A stretch of DNA of 63,208 nucleotides, the filler included, from Octopus bimaculoides (lineage: Eukaryota): the NCBI RefSeq assembly GCF_001194135.2. It is 5 parts of 4 records of this genome, joined end to end, with 100 filler letters (N's around TTAATTAATTAA, not from the genome) between each part and the next. Parts side by side here need not be neighbours in the genome. Positions count along the whole stretch, not along the records: positions 46,595 to 63,208 come from NC_068981.1; 4 more parts are not named here. The stretch is one strand, 5' to 3'. A program made the position numbers and the translations under genes. The notes beneath the pieces are model-generated. The model searched no databases. It was given only the letters and a program-made list of their open reading frames with translations, and was not told where the DNA came from. Positions 46,495 through 61,690 of this stretch are shown here, in pieces; position 1 is the stretch's first letter, and each line of letters starts with the position of its first letter.

Positions 46495-47110
46495 NNNNNN
46501 NNNNNNNNNNNNNNNNNNNNNNNNNNNNNNNNNNNNNNTTAATTAATTAANNNNNNNNNNNNNNNNNNNNNNNNNNNNNNNNNNNNNNNNNNNNTCTTGA
46601 CGAACGCCAGATGGAGGCAGCCGATCTGGTCGACAACAGACTAACAGCGCTGGAAAGGAAAAACAAATATGTTTATAAAACAAACATATTAATCTTAGAT
46701 TGTTTTTCTTTTCTCATCCTTTTTTTTTAACGTTGTCTTTTGTTTTTATTTTCGTATTTAGTCAACTAAAAAAGAGCAGGAGAGAGTAAGGGGTGTGAAT
46801 GGAAGGAAAGGATGAGGAGAAGGTGGAGGAGGTCATTGTTAATGAGAGGGGGGGGGGGGTTATTATTTTTTTTTTTAATCATTTTAACCTCGACTTTTGA
46901 CATCGTTCCATCACCAGTGAAGAAAAAGAGGAAAGAACAACAACACTCTTTATAAGAAACATCAACACACTAAAAGTTCAGTGCAGCAACGCCGTTGCTC
47001 CGTTTCATCACACTTCCAGCCACTGCTGTCTCTACTACTACTACTACTACTACTAATCATAATAATAATAAATAATAATAATGATAATAATAGTATAACA
47101 ATGATAATGA

Positions 47111-47327
47111 TTTCGAATTTTGTCACAAGGCCAGCAAGTTCGGTGGTTGAGTGAAGTCGATATTAGAGATTGATCCCAGTGTTTAACTGGTACTTATTTT
47201 ATCAACTCCGAAAGAATGAAAGACAAAGTCGATCGACCGCGGCGGAATTTGAACTCGGAACGTAAAGACGGATGAAATACTGCTAAGCATTTTCCCGGCG
47301 TGCTAACGATTCTGCTAGCTCGCCGCC

Positions 47328-47329
<2 letters not shown>
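47111..47329 (-). mobile_element. SINE family A, full length
   Basis: Head ggcggcgagctagcagaatcg, flanked by AAT repeats. Confidence 0.85.
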
Positions 47330-47370
<41 letters not shown>

Positions 47371-47376
47371 TAATAC

Positions 47377-47718
47377 TGCTGTGACCCCTTTCGGTCATGA
47401 CTGACCATGGGATTGCACCTAGAAAGTTACCCTCCCAGGCACAAGTCCGGGCAAGGTTGTTTAGGGAAGACCAGCAGTCGCCCATGCATACCAGCCTCCC
47501 CTCTCCACGCCACCAGTGTTATCCAAGGGAGAGGCAAAGGGGCCGATAGAGCTTGGCACCTGTGACGTCGCAACTCATTTCTACAATTGAGTGAACTGGA
47601 GCAATATAAAAAAAAGTATCTTGCTTAAGAACACAACACGCAGCCCGGTCCGGGATTCGAATTCGCAACCTCACGATCGTAAGCTCGACGCTTTAACCAC
47701 TGAGTCATGCGCCTTCAC
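47377..47718 (-). mobile_element. tRNA-derived SINE with CORE-like box and a different (RTE-like) tail
   Basis: Head gtgaaggcgcatgactcagtggtta..gcgaattcgaatcccgg, central ttgctccagttcactca..aaatgagt, tail ctaggtgcaatcccatggtcagtcatgaccgaaagggg. Confidence 0.8.
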
Positions 47719-47793
47719 ATAATAATGATAATAATAATAATAATTAATTCGTTTTATTGACCACAAGGGCTAATATCAATCAATATCAAAATT

Positions 47794-48080
47794 AAAAGAA
47801 GAGTGCCATTGTTATCTAGTGAACGATATTTCGACATCTTGTGTGTCTTCAACGGGTTCAGAAAATAAATTTGTCAATCTACTTCATTTTGGTTAATTTA
47901 TAAAGGATTGGGTTAATTCCTCCAGAAGATATAGAGTCAAAATTAAAAGAAGAGGAGTTACCTCAATCCTTTCTATATTAACCAAAATGAAGTAGATTAA
48001 CAAATATATTTTTTGAACCAGTTGAAGACACACAAGATGTCGAAATATCGTTCACTAGATAACAATGGCACTCTTCTTTT
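47794..48080. repeat. long inverted repeat: 129-bp arms, 29-nt loop
   Basis: 47794-47922 is the reverse complement of 47952-48080 with 9 mismatches by my count; the outer 60 bp are perfect. Confidence 0.95.
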
Positions 48081-48384
48081 GCCTGTCCAAAGCATTTTCA
48101 CATGTTTGTCCTTGCTTGTTTTCAGACTTTTCGTCAGTCTTTCTTTCATACGTTCTGAGTAATACAAAGCTTTTTCATAATTTCCAAGTTACTCTGGTGG
48201 GTGAAAAATATTATGGATGTGCATCATGTATGATGCATGGATGTCAGGGAAATATCTCTTGTGTATCGCATGCGATCCTTTGGACAAGCAAAGGGTGAAG
48301 TATATTACACGGAGATGGCTTTGCTAATAAATAGGGATAATGCAAGCATGGTTGCATATATAAAGATAGCTTAGCTACCTCGTA

Positions 48385-48575
48385 ATTTGGAATTTAATCC
48401 CACTGGATCAGGAACGCGTTGTGTTCTTCACAAGGCACTTCATTTCACATTGCTCCAGTCCACTCGTCTGGCAAAATTGAGTAATCCTGCGACGGACCGG
48501 CGTCCTATCCATGTGTTATATATACATGGACCAGGAGACCGGTCCCTGTGAGACTATATGACACGGGAAGGATCT
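48385..48575 (+). mobile_element. degenerate CORE-like SINE with a third tail type
   Basis: gttgtgttcttcacaaggcacttcatttcacattgctccagtccactc..ggcaaaattgagtaatcctgcgacggaccggcgtcc. Confidence 0.6.
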
Positions 48576-49409
48576 TTATCCTATCCTATCTATTATCCTG
48601 CATCTCACTGGACTAGTTTATCTACCACAGCCTCAGGTCAAGCAGAACCTTTGTATGTGAGAGTTGATAGAGAGGGTGAAGTGTGCAAAGGCTTGTCTAA
48701 AAGACTATTCGTGTTCAGCGGTGTTAGTCATAACCTGTCGCCAGTTTTAACATTACCAGCTGGTCTTTTGATGCTTTTAACAGAGTTCACACTGTTACAA
48801 GTATTCGGTAGGGTATCTATCTGGTCGAGGAATAATTTCGTTTTTGCTTTCCACAAGTTTTAGGGAACCTGAAAGTGGCACAATCTCTGTACTCGCATTT
48901 TCTAACCGAATCATTTAAACAACGACCATCAAGTCTCCTATTCACGAAGAAGCCATTATTTCCTAGTGATTCCTTCAGTAAACTTACCAATCGTTTACTG
49001 TTAAGAGCATTAAGGATTAAAGGAAAAGACGAGTTGTTTTGGGAGTTGAAAGTCAAAAATCTGTTGATGTCATGCATCGAGTTTATCATTCATATATACA
49101 CGTTTATATATTTATTTGTATATTTGTTATCGCCATCGTACATACCCACATACACATGCCACCCCAATCGCTCAAACACACACGTCTTTATTACGGGTGT
49201 CAAGCATTTCATAAACGAAAGCTGTCTAAATATTGAAATTCATTAATCAGTCTTAATTGCCCTAATATCATTCAAATTTATATTTATAATTATGTATGAA
49301 AGAACGCCCATACACGCAGAGACACACGCGTGTGTAGATATATGCATGTGTAGATATATGCGTGTGTAGATATACATACATAATTGGATTAACACATATA
49401 AATATGGCA

Positions 49410-49523
49410 CAAAATGGCTGTGTCGTAAGAAGTTTGCTTCCCAACCACATGGTTCCTGGTTCAGTCCCACTTGGGCAAGTGGATTTGGTATACGGAAACT
49501 GAAAGAAGCCCGTCGTATATATT

Positions 49524-49574
<51 letters not shown>

Positions 49575-49780
49575 TTGTGTGTCTGTGTTAGTCCCTACCC
49601 CCACTATTGCTTAACTACCGATGTTGGCGTGTTTACGTCTCTGTAACTTAGTGGTTCGGTAAAAGAGGCCGATAGAATAAGTATTAAGCTTTCATACAAT
49701 ATGTCCTGGGGTGGATTTGTTCGACTAAAGGCAGGGCTCCAGCATGGCCGCAGTTAAATGACTGAAAGAAGTACAAGAAA
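49410..49780 (+). mobile_element. SINE family B with internal deletions
   Basis: ggctgtgtcgtaagaagtttgcttcccaaccacatggttcc...ccagcatggccgcagttaaatgactgaaa. Confidence 0.85.
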
Positions 49781-50419
49781 TGAAAGAAATAACAGAAATA
49801 TACCTTCGTATTGTAACTTGTAAATTTTTATTTCATAAAATCGAATCGAGTGAATTTATAATTCACCGTGGGTTATTTCATATCGATTTTTTCATATCGA
49901 TTTATGTATTTTTATATATTTACGTGTTCGTATGTCTATGTATGATTTTATCCTTGTATTATTTGGAACGTTTATATTGTTTTATTAATGTGGAAGAATA
50001 TGCACATATATGTTGAATCTTCTGCTGGATAATTGGTCATGTTCCGTTAGTTTTCCGCTTACTTTGCCTCCATTCGAATTATAAAAAGTAGATATATATA
50101 TCGCTCAACCTGAAGTTATAGAAAATGGCACTCGGGAACGAACCCAGTACTTCGTGGTTGCGAAATGAACTTCTCAACCCCTCATCCCACGTAAGACATT
50201 GTAAACAACATATACAGAAAACCATAGGAATAATACGTGTGTGTGTGTGTGTGAGGGTCAAAATGAACGTACGTTTTAGATGTGTAAGCGTATTGTTTTT
50301 CATACCGTCGTTCTCTCCTTCCTCCAAATAAACGTTAGTATGTGAGAATATGTCGGAATGCAGAAGGAAACTTTAAATACTTCTGTAACAGCATAACTTA
50401 ACATTATATAACGATGTAG

Positions 50420-50850
50420 TGAGTGCAGCCTAATGTACGAACTGCAACTTAATAGAGTGTCAGTAATTTTATGAAGAGGTTGAAAGTTGTTTAATGATGC
50501 GACTGTAGCTTTGATGTTCCGACCGAATGCTAATGAACGGACTAACTACATTTTAATGGACTGACTACAGCTTAATGGACTCAATAGGCACTGATGAACA
50601 CTTTGGCTTTTATAGCTCAATGTTGAGACTACAGCTTAATGTATTAGTTCCAGCTCAGTGAGCAAACTACATTTTAATGGACTGGCTGCATTTTAATAGA
50701 CTAATCGCAGATGAATGAGTATACTGATCATTACTTTAATGGACTGACGGTAGATTCACAGGCTGCCTGGACTAGCCACATTTTAATTGACTTACTGCAG
50801 ATTAATATATTGACTTCAGCTTAATGAGTTGATTGTAGCCCAGGACTGCT
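50420..50850. repeat. degenerate ~19-bp minisatellite (consensus ~ACTACAGCTTAATGGACTG)
   Basis: Adjacent units actacattttaatggactg/actacagcttaatggactc and actacattttaatggactg/gctgcattttaatagacta. More units lie near 51055-51110. Confidence 0.75.
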
Positions 50851-51379
50851 TTTTCATTGAGAGTTGGGTGGCAAAAATACCATGCCAATTTGCTTAGCAT
50901 GCTTATTGTAATTTGTCTAACACAAATCAATGGTGAAGAGAGAAGACTTGTATGGATGTACAGTCTGTTTTGTGTCTTAACAAAAAATAATGGGGACAAA
51001 CGTTTCTGTAATGTTTTGATGAAAGTGAGGATTGGTATTTGTCGATTTGTAAACCATTGACTGCTTTAATGGATTAACTGCAACATAATAAGCTCACTGT
51101 AGCGTAAGTGTTCTACGAAACTTATGTGTGAATTAATAGTCTCTTTCCTATCATTTGCTTTCAGTTGTATTTTATAAAACTATACAAATTATACATTAAA
51201 TATATAAAAACGTACAGACATAAATGGCGATCGCTCCATCTTGACAGATAATAGCCATCTCAGTAAATCTGTGCCATCGTGATACTCTCCATCACGTCCG
51301 TGGGCTCCCAGATGACTCTTTAGCCACAGGACAAGATGAACCAGGTGGGATAAAGACATCCGTGCGTCACTGGATTAAT

Positions 51380-51600
51380 GCGACATACACTTGTACAATA
51401 CGTGTGTTTTGCTTCTTTCAAGTCCCTCCCGGCTTTTAAGTATCCTGTGGTGGGAAAAGTCTCAGAAGGCTCTATCAGTAACTTGGATGCAGTTACAAGT
51501 ATTACAAAATGACTGGCCGGTAGGACTTCAAAGAGCCTTCTTAGACTTTTCTCTGCAAAGGATACTTAGAAGTCAGGAGGGACATGAAAAAGGCACAACA
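51380..51600 (+). mobile_element. possible highly degenerate RTE-type LINE C-terminal fragment
   Basis: YNTCVL...LQRILR weakly recalls the RTE motif YxxCVLSxLLY..LRRILxI. Confidence 0.25.
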
Positions 51601-51776
51601 ATTTGCACACAATTGGATGGCCGTTGACTCTCATGGGTTCAGCCATCATTTACGCAAGCAGCGTATATACATACATTCAGCTAGTCATCAGTCTACTACT
51701 ACGTTTGTATACATACCTTTGTATGCCTGTAACTCTACATTATTCCACTTCCTATTCCAGTGCTGCTGAGGTCGAC

Positions 51777-51944
51777 TTGGCTCAGCGGCATTTCGTCTGT
51801 CTTTAGGTCCTGAGTTCAAATTCCGCCGAGGTCTACATTACCCTTCATCCTTTCGAGTCGATAAAATAACTACCGGTTGAGTGCTGGGGTCGATGTAATC
51901 CGCTTACCCAACTGCCCCGAAATTGCTGGCCTTGCACCAAAATT
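51777..51944 (+). mobile_element. SINE family A, 5'-truncated, fused tail-to-tail to an R4 fragment
   Basis: gcggcatttcgtc..gagttcaaattccgccgagg..aaattgctggccttgcaccaaaatt. Confidence 0.8.
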
Positions 51945-52344
51945 CCCAGGGCTCCGACAATTATTGGTACTACTGCTACCTTTTTCATCAACCACAACTG
52001 TTTAACTTCCCAAGCTAACCTGTCATATCTCTCGACTTTTCTTTCTTCCTTATCGCATACCTTGTTGCCAGCTGGGCATACTATATCTATGATCCAGCAT
52101 AGTTTGTTTTCTTTCTCAATTAAGACTATGTCCGGCTTCCTATTCTCAGTCTCATGGCCGCATTGAATCATAAAATCCCATCGGATTTTTGCATTTCTAT
52201 TTTCAACGATGCCTTCAGGTTTGTGGTCGTAATAATTTTTTGCTCTGTCAAGTCCATACCTGTTGCAAAGTGTCCAATGGACAAGCCTGGCTATATTGTC
52301 GTGGCGTGTCTTATATTCCTTCTGGACTAGTGGCGTACATTGTA

Positions 52345-52345
<1 letters not shown>
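51945..52345 (-). mobile_element. R4/Dong-like RLE domain fragment (copy 2)
   Basis: CTPLVQKEYKTRHDNIARLVHWTLC..YDHKPEGIVEN..KIRWDFMIQ..NRKPDIVLIEKENKLCWIIDIVCP..EKVERY..VPIIVGALG. Confidence 0.9.

Positions 52346-52402
<57 letters not shown>
52346..52402. repeat. (TTA)n/(TAA)n microsatellite between Dong-like copies
   Basis: Direct reading. Confidence 0.95.
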
Positions 52403-52405
<3 letters not shown>

Positions 52406-53150
52406 TAGTTTTATTTTTATAACGTGCTTTCACTTCACTACCGAGCGCAGCTCTGTGCGCCTTGGGTATGTGCTGTGGTGCTCTTATGTTTACTGTATTG
52501 AAAGTGTTTTGCGTAGAATGTGTGCAGTACCCAGTAGGGCAATTTTCTGTATGTTATATATATTTGTAAGTCCTGGTGTTTTTGTTATGTATTTGTCNNN
52601 NNNNNNNNNNNNNNNNNNNNNNNNNNNNNNNNNNNNNNNNNNNNNNNNNNNNNNNNNNNNNNNNNNNNNNNNNNNNNNNNNNNNNNNNNNNNNNNNNNNN
52701 NNNNNNNNNNNNNNNNNNNNNNNNNNNNNNNNNNNNNNNNNNNNNNNNNNNNNNNNNNNNNNNNNNNNNNNNNNNNNNNNNNNNNNNNNNNNNNNNNNNN
52801 NNNNNNNNNNNNNNNNNNNNNNNNNNNNNNNNNNNNNNNNNNNNNNNNNNNNNNNNNNNNNNNNNNNNNNNNNNNNNNNNNNNNNNNNNNNNNNNNNNNN
52901 NNNNNNNNNNNNNNNNNNNNNNNNNNNNNNNNNNNNNNNNNNNNNNNNNNNNNNNNNNNNNNNNNNNNNNNNNNNNNNNNNNNNNNNNNNNNNNNNNNNN
53001 NNNNNNNNNNNNNNNNNNNNNNNNNNNNNNNNNNNNNNNNNNNNNNNNNNNNNNNNNNNNNNNNNNNCATTTAGTTTAGCCCAGTATTTACCATGTAGGG
53101 GCTTTTCTTGCCATCGTTTTATCATGGTCCGTTGCTGTTCTAGTTTTAGT
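52403..53150 (-). mobile_element. 5'-truncated R4/Dong-like retrotransposon (copy 1) in (TAA)n
   Basis: IKRWQEKPLHGKY...(gap)...IQKIALLGTAHILRKTLSIQ*, a short 3' UTR, then (AAT)n. The 5' junction is also (AAT)n (53151-53209). Confidence 0.88.
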
Positions 53151-53153
53151 TTG

Positions 53154-53209
<56 letters not shown>

Positions 53210-53210
53210 G

Positions 53211-53425
53211 AGGCGGCGAGCTGGCAGAATCGTTAGCACGCTGGACGAAACGCTTAGCGGCATTTCTCCTATCACTGTGTTCTGAGTTCAAATTCCACCG
53301 AGGTCGATTTTGCCTTTCATCCCTTCGGTGTCGATAAATTAAGTACCAGTCATGTACTGTGGTCGATGTAATCGACTTACCCCTTCTCCACAAATTTCGG
53401 GTCTCGTGCCTATAGTAGAAAGGAT
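53211..53425 (+). mobile_element. SINE family A, full length
   Basis: aggcggcgagctggcagaatcg...cgggtctcgtgcctatagtagaaagg. Confidence 0.88.
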
Positions 53426-53886
53426 TATAATTATTATTACGTTTCATCATTTGTAAATTACACTTTTCTTTCTGCATTCCCATTTCTGCTTGTTTAGTTA
53501 CCCCTCCCCCCTCAAGCCCGTCTACAGGGCCTGTTTCTGTCTGGACACTATAAAGACAATTTCACGCTCAAGCAGCGAGGAAGCTGTTTCAAATATAGCA
53601 ATGTGCAGTTGACACGTTAGGCAACTAGACATAAATGTCTGTTTTTATATGATGTCAAATGTAACTTTTCTGTCGTGGTCTACTTAAACAAAAGTAAATA
53701 ATTAAATGACAATAATTAAAAATAAATATCCAAATGAACTTAAAACTCTGAGACGTGAACCTTACAAATAGAAAATTTCGTTTCAATTTATTTAAATATT
53801 TCGGTATTTCAATAATTATGTCTTGCTATATTTGATATGGAGACAAATTAATTGGAATCACATTAAATATATTATATATATATTCA

Positions 53887-53948: not shown

Positions 53949-54469
53949 ATGTCATTATTCAGTTTCTTTCATGATTTCTTGCCAATAGAGAAAGAACCGG
54001 TTTCTAACCTAGATCTAAGGCTCCATCATTGGAATTTCAACAACAGGGTATTTTTGTATGCATGGATGGATGGATGGATGTGCAAATTTGTATGATTTAT
54101 GTATGTATTCTCATGCATATAATTGCATATCTAGACATGCTTATATATATTTAAATGATAAACTTCCGGAAAGCTTTACGGATTTTTACAGTTCCAGTGA
54201 TGGATTGGATTTGTAGTCTTCGAATTAGCTTTCCTCCTTTCTGGTTTTGAGAAGCTTAATTTCTCACGATTGATATTTAGACAGTGTGTTACATATCCCA
54301 GGGCCCCAATAATTACAGGTATAAACCTGAACTTGTAATCTGGTTTGAGTAACTGCAGATTTCTCAATAGTTCAGCATAGGTGTTCTCTTTTTCACTGAT
54401 CAGCCTTATGTTAACATCCGCTGGGCAGTTAATTTCCACAACTTTGTACAGTTTCTCTTCTCTATCCCA

Positions 54470-54470
<1 letters not shown>
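53949..54470 (-). mobile_element. 5'-truncated R4-clade RLE retrotransposon (CATA-associated family)
   Basis: WDREEKLYKVVEINCPADVNI..SEKENTYAELLRNLQLLKPDYKFRFIPVIIGALGYVTHCL, plus a ~200-bp 3' UTR. The 5' junction abuts (CATA)n. Confidence 0.9.
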
Positions 54471-54500
<30 letters not shown>

Positions 54501-54537
54501 TGTATGTATGTATGCATGTATGTATAGTGTATGTACG

Positions 54538-54574
<37 letters not shown>

Positions 54575-55216
54575 NNNNNNNNNNNNNNNNNNNNNNNNNN
54601 NNNNNNNNNNNNNNNNNNNNNNNNNNNNNNNNNNNNNNNNNNNNNNNNNNNNNNNNNNNNNNNNNNNNNNNNNNNNNNNNNNNNNNNNNNNNNNNNNNNN
54701 NNNNNNNNNNNNNNNNNNNNNNNNNNNNNNNNNNNNNNNNNNNNNNNNNNNNNNNNNNNNNNNNNNNNNNNNNNNNNNNNNNNNNNNNNNNNNNNNNNNN
54801 NNNNNNNNNNNNNNNNNNNNNNNNNNNNNNNNNNNNNNNNNNNNNNNNNNNNNNNNNNNNNNNNNNNNNNNNNNNNNNNNNNNNNNNNNNNNNNNNNNNN
54901 NNNNNNNNNNNNNNNNNNNNNNNNNNNNNNNNNNNNNNNNNNNNNNNNNNNNNNNNNNNNNNNNNNNNNNNNNNNNNNNNNNNNNNNNNNNNNNNNNNNN
55001 NNNNNNNNNNNNNNNNNNNNNNNNNNNNNNNNNNNNNNNNNNNNNNNNNNNNNNNNNNNNNNNNNNNNNNNNNNNNNNNNNNNNNNNNNNNNNNNNNNNN
55101 NNNNNNNNNNNNNNNNNNNNNNNNNNNNNNNNNNNNNNNNNNNNNNNNNNNNNNNNNNNNNNNNNNNNNNNNNNNNNNNNNNNNNNNNNNNNNNNNNNNN
55201 NTATATATATATAGGA

Positions 55217-55493: not shown

Positions 55494-55711
55494 AAACACA
55501 CACAAACACACGCCACACATATATGTAATATGTATGTGCATGTGTGTTTGTATATATATATATGTATATATAAGTTCAAAAAAAAAGAAAAAGACAAAAA
55601 ACAACAACGTGAGGACGTGATACAGATTGTGTTACTAGACGCTCGGGAAAGGAAAGAGAGAGAGAGTATAAGATTTATATATATATATATATATATGCTG
55701 GNNNNNNNNNN

Positions 55712-57162
55712 GACGGCCTTACATAGAAGAAAAGGGAAAAAAAAAAGAAAGAAGCTGCGGGCTGGACAAAGACATAATGGTATGTGTAATGAAGGTGATA
55801 ATAATGAATAAACGGGGGGAAACAGCAACGCCCGCCGATTGCTTGATCGCCGAAAATATTGTTCTCATATATGAGGCAACAAGCCTCTTACAGATGTTCA
55901 TATTGTTCATGATATCTATCACTGAAGCATTTTCGCCTTTCATGCATAACCCTCCTCATCACTTGTGTGTCCAATTCCCATCAACGCCCACGCCCTCTCT
56001 AGGCACACCTCGAGTGGCGTGTCGACGTCGCCAGGCACCATGTAAAATATTTCTCTGAAGTCATATAGCTCCTGCACTGTGTCCCACATTAAGTCCTCCA
56101 CAATTATCTGCGGAAGCCATTCGGGATCCCGCATGCAAGCCATGGTTGCTCCCTTAGGATATTTTTCTATCTCCCCACCTCTGTAGAAGAAGACCAACGA
56201 TTCTTCTTCCTCCGGTAAAGAGATAGACTTTTCCACCGTCGGTGGCACAATTCCCAGCGGCGGTGGTTCAACATCCGTTGGCACCTTTTTCTTTTTTCCG
56301 GTGGGAGAAGGAGAGTCCTCCGGTTTACCCGGGGGACTCAATCCCTCTTCCAACTCTACATTTGTTTGAGGTTTCGGCGGGCTACTATTAATGCCCGCCT
56401 TTCTCTTCTTTCCTCTTTCTGTTGAAGCTACTGCCTCCTCATTTTTTTCCTGCAGAGCAGGACTACTTTTTTAAATGGGTGTCTGCTCCTGTGTCACTTT
56501 CGTGTCTTGGCGACAATCCTTCTTCACATGACCCGGCTCCAGGCATCTGTGACACCTGGAAGGTGGTCCTTAAAAAATTACAGGATACCTAGCTCCTGCC
56601 ATGGTCAAGTAGTCTGGAAAGACCAGACTGTCATCGTCTAACTGGGTCCACAACGTTAATATGGCCTTAGCCCCGACCCAGTCAGCAGATGGCAGCAATT
56701 TAACATTTAACAATTTAGTGTCTCTGGTGCCACCAAGTCCCCTTTGGATGGTTTCGGCCAACCAACTTTCTTTTAAATCCGGTGGCAACCCGCGGACAAA
56801 AGCCCGCTTACATTTCCTCCCACACTAAGAAGGGAGGAACAAGATTTTTCCCCCTTCAGGGGCTGACTGGCGAACTTACACACCATCTCCGGGGTTCCAA
56901 ACAGCAACCATATAGTTGCATATTTGGAACCCCTGGCGATATGCTCTATCGTCGGCATGTACCCCGCCAGCTCCTTTTCTATTTCTAGCCTAGGAAAGAG
57001 GGCAATGGTATCCAAGGACTTTGAATAAGTCCTTAGAACCACCGTCCTCTTTTCCAAATCTGTCACCCATTCTTTGGGTGGGTTAATTTCCCACACCAAA
57101 GCAGTGTTATTTTTTCTATTGTTCATATTTTAACTGCAAATAATAACAATAACAATAATAAC

Positions 57163-57758: not shown

Positions 57759-58419
57759 ATGTATATATATATAGATAGATAGATAAAACTTACTNNNNNN
57801 NNNNNNNNNNNNNNNNNNNNNNNNNNNNNNNNNNNNNNNNNNNNNNNNNNNNNNNNNNNNNNNNNNNNNNNNNNNNNNNNNNNNNNNNNNNNNNNNNNNN
57901 NNNNNNNNNNNNNNNNNNNNNNNNNNNNNNNNNNNNNNNNNNNNNNNNNNNNNNNNNNNNNNNNNNNNNNNNNNNNNNNNNNNNNNNNNNNNNNNNNNNN
58001 NNNNNNNNNNNNNNNNNNNNNNNNNNNNNNNNNNNNNNNNNNNNNNNNNNNNNNNNNNNNNNNNNNNNNNNNNNNNNNNNNNNNNNNNNNNNNNNNNNNN
58101 NNNNNNNNNNNNNNNNNNNNNNNNNNNNNNNNNNNNNNNNNNNNNNNNNNNNNNNNNNNNNNNNNNNNNNNNNNNNNNNNNNNNNNNNNNNNNNNNNNNN
58201 NNNNNNNNNNNNNNNNNNNNNNNNNNNNNNNNNNNNNNNNNNNNNNNNNNNNNNNNNNNNNNNNNNNNNNNNNNNNNNNNNNNNNNNNNNNNNNNNNNNN
58301 NNNNNNNNNNNNNNNNNNNNNNNNNNNNNNNNNNNNNNNNNNNNNNNNNNNNNNNNNNNNNNNNNNNNNNNNNNNNNNNNNNNNNNNNNNNNNNNNNNNN
58401 NNNNNNNNNNNNNNNNNNN

Positions 58420-58607
58420 GGGCCAGTTTCCGATACAGGGGGATCAATTACACCCCAGTGTCCAAGTGGTACTTTATATTTTATTGTTCCCGAAACGATG
58501 AAATGCAAAGCTGGCGTCGGCGGATTTTGAACTCAGGACGTAAAAGACGGACGAAACGCTGCGAAGCCTTTTTGTCAACGTGCTAACGATTCTGCCAGTT
58601 TGCAACG
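58420..58607 (-). mobile_element. SINE family A (diverged)
   Basis: ctggcagaatcgttagcacg..gagttcaaaatccgccga. Confidence 0.75.
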
Positions 58608-58622
58608 TCATAAATACATAAT

Positions 58623-58822
58623 AATTTTGCCATAAGGTTTGGGGAAGGGGTAAAGCCTATTTCATCTACCTCAGTATTCAACTGGTACTTATTTCATCGA
58701 CTCCGAAAGGATGAAAAGCAAAGTCGACCTCGGCGGAATTTGAACTCAGAACGTTAAGACGGATGAAAAACCGCTTAAGCAACTTGTCCGGCATCCTAAC
58801 CATTCTACCTCCTCGCTGCCTT
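58623..58822 (-). mobile_element. SINE family A (diverged), tandem with the previous copy
   Basis: ggcagcgaggaggtagaatgg..gagttcaaattccgccgaggtcgactttgc. Confidence 0.8.
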
Positions 58823-60235
58823 ACAAGTATAACTGAAATATTATTACGATAAAGAAGTAGCTTGTACTGACTTGACTTCCATGTCGCGTTTACTGTAAAC
58901 CTATTTTTACAGCATTTCTTTCCAAACCATCAAATTGTTTCTTAACAACTTCTCCGCCTCGAAAAAGAGAGAAAAAAAACATAATTCTTTGTGGGTAAGG
59001 AGAGATAAAAAGCCATCAATTTGACGGCTCCTCCAGTTGTCTGCACTGTTTTAACTACACGTGGTAACGGATCTGAGGAGGCAATCTTTATACATGCAAG
59101 GAGGTCTAATTAAGGATGTCATTTTACGGTAGAGGTTAACGGTAGAACTCTTGTTGGGGTTTAAGAGAGTGTATATAAAATGTGTGTAGAAAAATGTGGC
59201 TGACCACATTTGGTGCAAGATTATGTCGTCTTCAAACCGATAAAGGGTCGAATAAGGGAGAGGAACAAAGAAGAAAGGCGTGGGGGGTTAGGGAAGGAGG
59301 TTGTTTCAGGAAATAAATCCGCCATTGTGTATCTTACTAACGAAGAATTTGTGATGTTAACCAGATTTTCACATTAAAGCTTCTGGCTATCTGAAAGACA
59401 TGTATGTATTTAATGTACGTACGTATACAAGCATATATGTATGTATGCATATACACACACATATAGATATGCATATATGTGTGTGTGTGTGTATATATAT
59501 ATATGTATATATATAAATATATGTATATATATATATGTATATATATATATGTATGTATATATATATATGTATATATATATATGTATGTATATATATATAT
59601 GTGTGTATATATATATATATGTATATATATGTATATATATATATGTATATATATGTATATATNNNNNNNNNNNNNNNNNNNNNNNNNNNNNNNNNNNNNN
59701 NNNNNNNNNNNNNNNNNNNNNNNNNNNNNNNNNNNNNNNNNNNNNNNNNNNNNNNNNNNNNNNNNNNNNNNNNNNNNNNNNNNNNNNNNNNNNNNNNNNN
59801 NNNNNNNNNNNNNNNNNNNNNNNNNNNNNNNNNNNNNNNNNNNNNNNNNNNNNNNNNNNNNNNNNNNNNNNNNNNNNNNNNNNNNNNNNNNNNNNNNNNN
59901 NNNNNNNNNNNNNNNNNNNNNNNNNNNNNNNNNNNNNNNNNNNNNNNNNNNNNNNNNNNNNNNNNNNNNNNNNNNNNNNNNNNNNNNNNNNNNNNNNNNN
60001 NNNNNNNNNNNNNNNNNNNNNNNNNNNNNNNNNNNNNNNNNNNNNNNNNNNNNNNNNNNNNNNNNNNNNNNNNNNNNNNNNNNNNNNNNNNNNNNNNNNN
60101 NNNNNNNNNNNNNNNNNNNNNNNNNNNNNNNNNNNNNNNNNNNNNNNNNNNNNNNNNNNNNNNNNNNNNNNNNNNNNNNNNNNNNNNNNNNNNNNNNNNN
60201 NNNNNNNNNNNNNNTGGTCTTTTTCGCTACCCAGA

Positions 60236-60290: not shown

Positions 60291-60364
<74 letters not shown>

Positions 60365-60368
60365 ATTA

Positions 60369-60400
<32 letters not shown>

Positions 60401-60455
60401 ACTGCAACTACTACTACTACTACTACTACTACTGCTTCTGCTGCTGCTGCTGCTG

Positions 60456-60512
<57 letters not shown>
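60236..60512. repeat. compound trinucleotide repeat (ACC)n-(CTG)n-(CTA)n
   Basis: Direct reading. Confidence 0.95.
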
Positions 60513-61634: not shown

Positions 61635-61690
61635 NNNNNNNNNNNNNNNNNNNNNNNNNNNNNNNNNNNNNNNNNNNNNNNNNNNNNNNN

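What the first reader, a model, noticed from the sequence alone, without database searches (positions are those of the whole stretch)
47786..48080. Long fold-back hairpin with a template-switch signature
The 129-bp arms flank a 29-nt loop. The outer 60 bp are perfect and all 9 mismatches fall in the inner 69 bp. An 18-bp direct repeat, TCAAAATTAAAAGAAGAG (47786-803 and 47937-954), brackets the left arm, and its last 10 nt are complementary to CTCTTCTTTT at 48071-80. This is what microhomology-primed inverted copying (FoSTeS/MMBIR or Pol theta templated insertion) would leave. If transcribed, it gives about 130 bp of dsRNA, a likely ADAR or Dicer substrate; coleoids are known for extensive A-to-I editing. 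The uneven mismatch distribution hints at arm conversion or selection.
Basis: partly seen in the sequence, partly recalled or inferred. Interest (0 to 1): 0.7.

Follow-up and report, generated by a model that had tools for sequence, protein, structure and literature searches.

The report
Local inverted duplication forming a hairpin
A 287-bp fold-back repeat in a SINE-dense stretch of animal DNA looks like a replication copying error (template switching), probably built in two steps; nothing shows it has a function, and the mechanism is already well described.

Summary
The arms are 129 nt (47794-47922 and 47952-48080), 120/129 complementary, with a 29-nt loop. All 9 mismatches lie in the inner 69 nt. 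A perfect 18-nt direct repeat sits at 47786-803 and 47937-954, and its last 10 nt are complementary to 48071-80.

The junction anatomy fits microhomology-primed inverted copying. The 10-mer AAAAGAAGAG occurs three times in the window, always in this structure. Positions 47786-47853 equal the 18-nt repeat plus the reverse complement of 48021-48070, overlapping by that 10-mer.

A single event does not explain 0 mismatches in 68 nt next to 9 in 69 (P about 1e-4). I favour an older imperfect repeat that a later switch extended or homogenised.

No target-site duplication flanks the repeat, the arms match no SINE in the piece, and there is no Rfam hit. That argues against a MITE, an inverted SINE pair or a known RNA.

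Untestable here: genome copy number, the empty allele, read support, transcription, editing, and the coleoid origin.

A weak katanin MIT-like frame crosses the right arm's outer edge and remains inconclusive.

Verdict: a real feature, a new example of a known mutational process, of low to moderate interest.

The parts
47786..47803 (+). Direct repeat copy 1 (TCAAAATTAAAAGAAGAG). Its last 10 nt are the outer end of the left arm.
   Evidence: D3, 18/18
47794..47853 (+). Outer 60 nt of the left arm, a perfect reverse complement of 48021-48080. Together with 47786-47793 it forms a 68-nt perfect chimeric tract, which I read as the younger part.
   Evidence: (47786-47853 equals the direct-repeat copy plus rc(48021-48070) exactly)
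47854..47922 (+). Inner 69 nt of the left arm, 60/69 complementary to 47952-48020. I read this as the older core of the repeat.
   Evidence: mismatches at 47854, 47861, 47868, 47875, 47898, 47901, 47911, 47913, 47917
47923..47936 (+). 14-nt filler CAGAAGATATAGAG between the left arm and direct-repeat copy 2. No template was found for it.
   Evidence: only the self match at up to 2 mismatches
47937..47954 (+). Direct repeat copy 2. It lies in the loop and runs 3 nt into the right arm.
   Evidence: D3
47952..48080 (+). Right arm of the inverted repeat, probably the original (template) copy.
   Evidence: I5. The polarity is inferred from the microhomology geometry and, weakly, from the minus-strand reading frame that continues across 48080/48081.
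48071..48080 (+). CTCTTCTTTT, complement of the last 10 nt of the direct repeat. Proposed annealing site for the template switch.
47997..48191 (-). Stop-to-stop frame *LGNYEKALYYSERMKERLTKSLKTSKDKHVKMLWTGKRRVPLLSSERYFDILCVFNWFKKYIC*. It has weak, sub-threshold similarity to the katanin p60 MIT domain and crosses the outer edge of the right arm. Possibly a relic exon or pseudogene fragment, possibly chance.
   Evidence: PF21126, E 0.0013, 18.8 bits, below the 23.1 cut-off; PDB 5lb7_B, E 0.004-0.012. Searches found no supporting relatives.
47378..47715 (-). tRNA-derived SINE ('SINE B') with an (ATT)n tail at 47329-47377. It lies 70 nt to the left of the structure. Context, not part of the hairpin.
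48415..48470 (+). 5'-truncated relative of SINE B in the opposite orientation. It marks the right limit of the roughly 660-bp non-SINE island that holds the hairpin.
   Evidence: I2, I5

Best explanation
The hairpin is a locally generated inverted duplication. It is not a mobile element and not a known RNA gene.

Favoured polarity (inferred): the right arm and its right flank are the original sequence. A growing DNA strand that had just copied ...TCAAAATTAAAAGAAGAG left its template. It annealed by its last 10 nt to CTCTTCTTTT, about 120 nt ahead on the same-sense strand of the sister duplex or across the fork. It then copied that strand backwards, which wrote the reverse complement of the right arm. 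On return it landed 18 nt upstream of where it had left, duplicating the 18-mer, with 14 untemplated nt at the return junction.

The direct repeat and the outer 60 nt are perfect, while the inner 69 nt are 13% diverged. So the present structure was most likely made in at least two steps. First came an older imperfect inverted repeat, the inner core. A later template switch between the arms then extended or re-copied the outer part and laid down the 68-nt perfect tract 47786-47853.

Shown: the repeat anatomy, the microhomology, the absence of a target-site duplication, and the age heterogeneity.

Inferred: the polarity, the order and number of switches, and that the structure is selectively neutral.

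If the region is transcribed, either strand would fold into about 129 bp of near-perfect dsRNA. Nothing here shows that it is transcribed.
For: - Reverse-complement copy with exact boundaries.
- The 10-nt microhomology is shared by the direct repeat and the arm end, and that 10-mer occurs nowhere else in the window.
- 47786-47853 equals the direct-repeat copy plus rc(48021-48070) exactly.
- Perfect outer part against diverged inner part: P = 0.0027 and 2e-4. Including the 18-nt repeat, 0.87^68 is about 8e-5 (my arithmetic from the rate).
- No direct repeat flanks the whole structure, and complementarity stops at the arm ends.
- The arms, loop and right flank are single-copy within the piece and unrelated to its SINE families.
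- No Rfam family matches the region even at E <= 1.
- Published mechanism: template switching creates reverse-complement repeats in a single event and can fix, homogenise or extend existing imperfect repeats (PMC8794818, PMC5453318, PMC13100816).
Against: - No ancestral or empty allele, outgroup or second assembly could be obtained. The event is reconstructed from one sequence only.
- The 14-nt filler is unexplained.
- The two-step variants need three switches, or two separate events, and cannot be told apart.
- The reverse polarity (left arm original, 3-nt GAG microhomology) is less parsimonious but not excluded.
- A templated tract of 60-126 nt is long for short-range template-switch mutations. 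The largest pattern mentioned in PMC8794818 is 59 bp.
- Genome copy number is unknown, so a mobile-element origin of the core repeat remains possible.
Confidence: 0.6

Rival explanations
1. It is one copy of a palindromic non-autonomous DNA transposon (a MITE or foldback-type element with about 129-bp terminal inverted repeats), present many times in the genome.
For: - The genome is very repeat-dense: five SINE A copies in about 14 kb.
- Palindromic Harbinger MITEs of about 220 bp that fold on themselves are documented in Xenopus, and octopus has an unusually high fraction of loci able to form long near-perfect dsRNA (PMC5625713).
- Genome copy number could not be measured. The collections scanned lack even this piece's SINE.
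Against: - No target-site duplication of any standard length (TA, TTA/TAA, TTAA or 8 bp) flanks the repeat. The flanks are TCAAAATT and GCCTGTCC.
- The only direct repeat brackets one arm, not the element.
- The sharp split between a perfect outer 60 nt and a 13% diverged inner part is not expected for transposon ends.
- There is no second copy or fragment in 14 kb of a repeat-rich piece, nor in 40 kb of a related genome.
Confidence: 0.15
2. All or part of the fold-back, especially the perfect outer 60 bp, is an assembly or library artefact of a short-read draft scaffold.
For: - The piece is a gapped draft with six N-runs of 10-627 bp, most of them next to microsatellites.
- Perfect inverted joins are a known artefact class (general knowledge).
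- The perfect part of the structure begins and ends abruptly.
Against: - The inner 69 bp carry 9 arm-specific differences, so at least the core repeat is two distinct sequences.
- The structure has an asymmetric 29-nt loop and an 18-nt direct repeat with microhomology. That is a biological junction signature, not what a chimeric read or graph mis-join gives.
- The hairpin lies inside 6 kb of gap-free sequence, 46595-52597.
Confidence: 0.1
3. It is a selected, transcribed hairpin-RNA locus: an endo-siRNA precursor of the Drosophila hpRNA type, or a hyper-edited ADAR substrate. Its outer stem would be kept perfect because it is functional.
For: - Either strand folds into an almost uninterrupted 129-bp duplex, z = -25.
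- Long near-perfect dsRNAs are the main ADAR targets across Metazoa, and octopus shows an exceptionally strong hyper-editing signal (PMC5625713).
- One arm may derive from a gene-like fragment, as hpRNAs derive from their target genes (from my own knowledge, not checked here).
Against: - There is no evidence of transcription, small RNAs or editing, and none can be obtained with these tools.
- There is no Rfam match.
- Selection for pairing would leave compensatory changes, not a 60-nt block identical to its partner next to an 18-nt perfect direct repeat that plays no part in the stem.
- The gene-like similarity is below the family threshold and unsupported by the large searches.
Confidence: 0.07
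4. It is one old inverted duplication whose centre has decayed faster than its ends. Repeated hairpin or cruciform processing and error-prone repair near the centre of symmetry would cause this.
For: - Mismatch density rises towards the loop: 0 in arm positions 0-59, 4 in 60-103, 5 in 104-128.
- Centre-directed rearrangement that stabilises palindromes is described in yeast and mammalian cells (general knowledge; cf. the review PMC7999016 listed, which I did not read).
Against: - The changes are base substitutions only, with no small deletions or insertions at the centre.
- The arms stay in perfect register, and a 29-nt spacer already exists.
- The perfect 18-nt direct repeat points to a young outer tract.
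Confidence: 0.08

Closest known systems
Template-switch mutations in DNA replication (Ripley 1982 model; Loytynoja & Goldman 2017, PMC5453318; Monttinen & Loytynoja 2022, PMC8794818; inverted-repeat expansion in yeast promoters, PMC13100816)
   Same: - A reverse-complement copy of adjacent sequence creates a hairpin-capable repeat.
- The switch happens at a short complementary stretch.
- An existing imperfect repeat can be extended or homogenised by a further switch, which fits the perfect outer and diverged inner parts seen here.
   Different: - Scale: a templated tract of 60-126 nt and arms of 129 nt. The cases in those papers are mostly a few to tens of bases (the largest pattern mentioned is 59 bp; yeast arms grow from 9 to 24 bp).
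- 10 nt of microhomology is long.
- The return junction carries an 18-nt duplication plus 14 untemplated nt.
- No ancestral state is available here.
FoSTeS / MMBIR and fold-back inverted duplications (PMC2621351; yeast fold-back inversions, PMC7467729 and PMC10622511; templated inverted insertions at breaks, PMC11724301)
   Same: - Microhomology-primed switching to a nearby template.
- An inverted copy next to its source with a short spacer.
- Complex junctions with small insertions.
   Different: - Those events are usually kilobases to megabases (copy-number variants, dicentrics) or very short (about 5-34 bp at breaks). This one is about 150 bp and interstitial, with both flanks intact.
- Simple snap-back of one broken end does not fit the strand geometry of the favoured polarity (inference).
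Palindromic MITEs such as the self-pairing Harbinger repeats of Xenopus (PMC5625713)
   Same: A 200-300-bp unit that folds on itself into near-perfect dsRNA without needing a partner copy.
   Different: - No target-site duplication and no recognisable terminal motif.
- An internal direct repeat that brackets one arm.
- No second copy in the sequence available.
- Copy number in the genome is untested.
Drosophila hairpin RNA (hpRNA) endo-siRNA loci
   Same: A long inverted repeat with a short loop. These arise by inverted duplication, sometimes of a fragment of a protein-coding gene.
   Different: No evidence here of transcription or small RNAs, and the derivation of the arm from a gene is only a weak sub-threshold similarity. 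This comparison rests on my own knowledge, not on a test.

Membership tests
Template-switch / microhomology-mediated inverted duplication | The new tract is the reverse complement of nearby sequence | tested here: met
   129-nt arms, 120/129 complementary, 29 nt apart. 47804-47853 equals rc(48021-48070) exactly.
Template-switch / microhomology-mediated inverted duplication | Microhomology at the switch junction | tested here: met
   The 10-nt AAAAGAAGAG is shared by the direct-repeat copy and the arm end. It occurs three times in the window, all in the structure, against 0.03 expected.
Template-switch / microhomology-mediated inverted duplication | The return junction is accounted for by a second switch | tested here: inconclusive
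   An 18-nt duplication fits a return upstream of the departure point, but 14 nt (47923-47936) have no template in the piece.
Template-switch / microhomology-mediated inverted duplication | The pre-event state is seen in an allele, outgroup or reconstructed ancestor | not testable with these tools
   No other assembly of the locus was reachable. The DNA collections lack this kind of genome. The related genome found is too distant.
MITE / foldback DNA transposon | Target-site duplication directly flanking the terminal inverted repeats | tested here: not met
   The flanks are TCAAAATT and GCCTGTCC. No TA, TWA, TTAA or 8-bp direct repeat sits at or within a few nt of the arm ends.
MITE / foldback DNA transposon | Multiple dispersed copies | tested here: inconclusive
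   None in the 16.6-kb piece and none in 40 kb of a related genome. The source genome itself could not be searched.
Inverted pair of SINEs (Alu-pair type dsRNA) | Each arm is a copy of a dispersed retroelement with its own tail | tested here: not met
   The arms match neither SINE A nor SINE B of the piece and have no tails. The two arms share identical boundaries.
Known structured RNA or miRNA family (Rfam 15) | Match to a covariance model | tested here: not met
   No match overlaps 47786-48080 even at E <= 1. All listed miRNA-like hits are microsatellite artefacts elsewhere and lie below their gathering scores.
hpRNA / long dsRNA substrate of Dicer or ADAR | A long, nearly perfect intramolecular duplex | tested here: met
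   -186 and -183 kcal/mol, z = -25, on either strand. 120 Watson-Crick pairs plus 3 (+) or 1 (-) G-U pairs.
hpRNA / long dsRNA substrate of Dicer or ADAR | Transcription, small RNAs or A-to-G clusters | not testable with these tools
   No expression data are available.
Katanin p60 (MIT domain exon) | Score above the Pfam gathering threshold for PF21126 | tested here: not met
   18.8 bits against a cut-off of 23.1, E 0.0013. PDB katanin chains give E 0.004-0.04.
Katanin p60 (MIT domain exon) | An intact exon (open frame, usable splice sites) and further exons of the gene | tested here: not met
   An in-frame TAA lies directly before LGNY. No other katanin-like segment exists in the piece. No protein in 5.8 billion shares words with the peptide, and no katanin was recovered by the exhaustive search.

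The most novel reading that the evidence does not exclude
The right arm is a relic of a katanin-like MIT-domain exon. Template switching turned it into a hairpin, and its transcript yields siRNAs against, or editing-dependent regulation of, a katanin paralogue. That would be a de novo hpRNA-type regulator born from its own target gene, outside arthropods.
Probability: 0.03. Interest if true: 0.65.

Novelty: new member of a known kind. Interest (0 to 1): 0.25.

Why it matters
If the reconstruction is right, this locus is a clean, large example of how template switching writes a long hairpin into an animal genome in one or two steps. Both junctions are still legible, and there is an internal age contrast that suggests stepwise growth of an inverted repeat.

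Such events are the raw material for dsRNA-forming loci: ADAR substrates, endo-siRNA hairpins and new miRNAs. If the source is an octopus, it would be one of very many loci able to form long dsRNA in that genome (PMC5625713). As a single locus without expression or population data it does not change what is known.

Tried and rejected
1. Katanin lead. The minus-strand frame across the right arm gave a sub-threshold katanin MIT hit.
   - The word-based search of 5.8 billion proteins found nothing.
   - The exhaustive HMMER search gave one hit, P0001. It is a four-unit tandem-repeat ORF on a 1.6-Mb prokaryote-type contig, and its E-value sums non-independent weak matches. I rejected it as chance.
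   - The katanin similarity stays inconclusive.

2. PiggyBac idea. From reading 'SSERYFDIL' I first suspected a piggyBac-transposase fragment. Pfam gave no such hit, so I dropped it.

3. Copy-number scans. Exact-pattern scans of the metagenome, prokaryote-genome and viral collections were all negative. The control scan with the piece's abundant SINE core was also negative, so these negatives say nothing.

4. Orthologous or alternative assemblies. Four exact-ORF look-ups near the hairpin were not on record.

5. Organism identification. The 137-aa ORF has no relatives. The LINE-like ORF has 66-75% relatives, and the two looked up lie on one ENA assembly. That assembly shares the LINE but none of the SINEs, so it is too distant to use.

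6. SINE tail next to the hairpin. I suspected that 47751-47785 was a SINE A-type 3' end. BLAST supports only the (ATT)n part, so this is not established.

7. Template for the 14-nt filler. None found at up to 2 mismatches.

8. Pfam scan of six ORFs in the piece. Nothing significant.

Full report
**Observation**

The finding is accurate at the stated coordinates. The repeat finder reports arms at 47794-47922 and 47952-48080. They are 129 nt long, 93% complementary and 29 nt apart (I5). Among the long inverted repeats listed for the 16.6-kb piece, it is the one well-matched pair that is not an N-run or microsatellite artefact.

A base-by-base comparison puts the nine mismatches at arm positions 60, 67, 74, 81, 104, 107, 117, 119 and 123, counted from the outer end. 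The outer 60 bp are therefore perfect. Complementarity stops abruptly outside the arms.

The 18-nt direct repeat TCAAAATTAAAAGAAGAG is present at 47786-803 and 47937-954 (D3). Its last ten bases, AAAAGAAGAG, occur exactly three times in the whole window: in the two repeat copies and, on the other strand, at 48071-80. Shuffles give 0.03 expected.

Folded as RNA, either strand gives an almost uninterrupted stem at -186 / -183 kcal/mol, against about -54 for shuffles (z = -25).

**Surroundings**

The piece is a gapped draft scaffold with six N-runs, most of them next to microsatellites. It is very rich in retroelements.
- A roughly 230-nt SINE ('SINE A') occurs five times in about 14 kb of resolved sequence.
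- A tRNA-derived SINE ('SINE B') lies at 47378-47715 on the minus strand, and a truncated relative starts near 48415 on the plus strand.
- Two LINE-like ORF fragments lie further right.

The hairpin sits in a roughly 660-bp island (47751-48414) between SINEs. Neither arm, the loop nor the right flank has another copy in the piece, and none resembles the SINEs. Rfam has no match over the hairpin even at E <= 1. The miRNA-like rows in that search are microsatellite artefacts elsewhere, all below their gathering scores.

**Junction anatomy**

On the plus strand the order is:
1. left flank
2. direct-repeat copy 1 (18 nt)
3. the rest of the left arm
4. a 14-nt filler, CAGAAGATATAGAG
5. direct-repeat copy 2 (18 nt, its last 3 nt already in the right arm)
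6. the right arm, ending in CTCTTCTTTT
7. right flank

The tract 47786-47853 is exactly the 18-mer followed by the reverse complement of 48021-48070. It is therefore a chimera of a direct copy and an inverted copy joined through the shared 10-mer. This is the signature of a strand whose 3' end ...AAAAGAAGAG annealed to CTCTTCTTTT on a same-sense template and was extended backwards.

Removing 47804-47954 (151 nt) gives a simple hypothetical ancestor. In it the 18-mer is followed directly by GAGTTACC..., and a 10-nt inverted microhomology lies 116 nt downstream. One switch out and one switch back, landing 18 nt upstream of the departure point, would produce the whole structure apart from the 14-nt filler. 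That filler has no template in the available sequence.

The reverse polarity would have the left arm as the original, the 18-mer copied first, and then a snap-back on a 3-nt GAG. It needs more steps and leaves the 10-nt overlap unexplained, but I cannot exclude it.

**Why one event is not enough**

If all 129 nt were copied at once, both halves should be equally diverged. The inner 69 nt differ at 13%, while the outer 60 nt and the 18-nt direct repeat are perfect.
- The chance that all nine mismatches fall in the inner part is 0.0027.
- The chance of no mismatch in 60 nt at the inner rate is 2e-4.
- With the direct repeat included it is about 8e-5.

The outer arm and the direct repeat therefore look younger than the core. 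Two readings fit.
- (a) An older imperfect repeat with arms of about 69 nt was extended outward by a later switch, which also laid down direct-repeat copy 1.
- (b) A single old insertion was later re-copied (homogenised) over its outer 60 nt. In that case the perfect 18-mer is a 0.08 coincidence.

Both processes are described. Template switching can create a reverse-complement repeat in one event and can also fix, homogenise or extend an existing imperfect one (PMC8794818, PMC5453318, PMC13100816).

A third possibility is faster decay near the centre of symmetry. It fits the rising mismatch density towards the loop. It does not fit the absence of any indel or the perfect direct repeat.

**Rivals**

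- MITE or foldback transposon. This is the main alternative because palindromic MITEs that fold on themselves are known (PMC5625713) and I could not measure copy number. Against it, there is no target-site duplication of any standard length at the arm ends, and the only direct repeat brackets one arm rather than the element.
- Assembly artefact. It cannot be excluded for the perfect outer block in a short-read draft. However, the arm-specific differences, the asymmetric loop and the microhomology junction look biological.
- Selected hairpin-RNA gene. This is compatible with the fold, but no data on transcription, small RNAs or editing bear on it.

**The gene-like frame**

On the minus strand a stop-to-stop frame (47997-48191) reads LGNYEKALYYSERMKERLTKSLKTSKDKHVKMLW... 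It resembles the first two helices of the katanin p60 MIT domain.
- Pfam PF21126: E 0.0013, 18.8 bits, below the 23.1 cut-off.
- PDB katanin chains: E 0.004-0.04.

The frame runs across the outer edge of the right arm. If the similarity is real, it supports the right arm plus right flank as the original contiguous sequence.

Against it:
- An in-frame TAA directly precedes LGNY.
- No other katanin-like segment is in the piece.
- No protein shares words with the peptide.
- The exhaustive search returned only a bacterial tandem-repeat ORF, which I reject as chance.

I treat this as an inconclusive lead.

**What could not be done**

- The public DNA collections open to me contain neither the hairpin nor the piece's abundant SINE. 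Their silence is therefore uninformative.
- Exact-ORF look-ups around the hairpin found no other assembly of the locus.
- The closest genome reachable shares only a LINE family, at 74-78% nucleotide identity, and none of the SINEs.
The SINEs look octopus-like to me from memory only.

If the source is Octopus bimaculoides, long near-perfect dsRNA-forming loci are unusually common there. About 4.4e-3 of random 50-bp loci can form them (PMC5625713), which lowers the surprise further.

**Verdict**

This is a real, non-random structure. It needs amending to at least two steps, and the functional suggestions remain untested. It is a new example of a known mutational process. Interest is low to moderate.

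Noticed in passing
47854, 47861, 47868, 47875 (partners 48020, 48013, 48006, 47999): The four outermost mismatches between the arms are spaced exactly 7 nt apart. Chance probability is about 0.01-0.03. I have no mechanism to offer.
   Followed up: partly
47997-48191, minus strand: A stop-to-stop frame with weak similarity to the katanin p60 MIT domain (LGNY...KD...W). It is below the Pfam threshold and has no supporting relatives. It may be a relic exon or chance.
   Followed up: yes
47105-47340 (-), 51780-51945 (+), 53199-53437 (+), 58454-58624 (-), 58672-58823 (-): Five copies of one roughly 230-nt SINE family (head GGCGGCGAGCTGGCAGAATCGTTAGCACGCCGGG, core GAGTTCAAATTCCGCCGAGGTCG) at 73-81% identity. 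Several of them abut an (ATT)n/(TAA)n run.
   Followed up: partly
47378-47715 (-) and 48415-48470 (+): A tRNA-derived SINE and a 5'-truncated relative in opposite orientation, about 700 nt apart. They form a second, weaker inverted pair (35 nt at 80%, 14 nt at 93%) around the hairpin island (I2 and I5). ARAGORN does not call the tRNA-like head.
   Followed up: partly
51845-52171 (-) and 54176-54517 (-): Two ORF fragments ending in the motif ...VPI(I)IGALG. Pfam finds no family in either, so the retroelement reading is my own. The first has 66-75% relatives; the two I looked up lie on megabase contigs of ENA assembly ERZ25066847, next to reverse-transcriptase ORFs.
   Followed up: partly
50402-50830: A degenerate minisatellite with a 19-nt period (about 14 units, 61-87% identical, unit like AACTACATTTTAATGGACT). 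The repeat finder sees it (D18), but TRF does not report it at score >= 80.
   Followed up: no
60291-60512: A long (CTA)n/(CTG)n trinucleotide tract, 74 units at 93%. It lies directly after an assembly gap.
   Followed up: no
52598-53067, 54575-55201, 55702-55711, 57795-58419, 59663-60214, 61635-61690: Six N-runs, most bordered by TA/TG/TATG microsatellites. They account for inverted repeats I1-I4 and most of the long 'ORFs' full of X.
   Followed up: yes
55940-56353 (-): A 137-aa ORF with balanced, protein-like composition but no Pfam domain and no relative in 5.8 billion proteins.
   Followed up: yes
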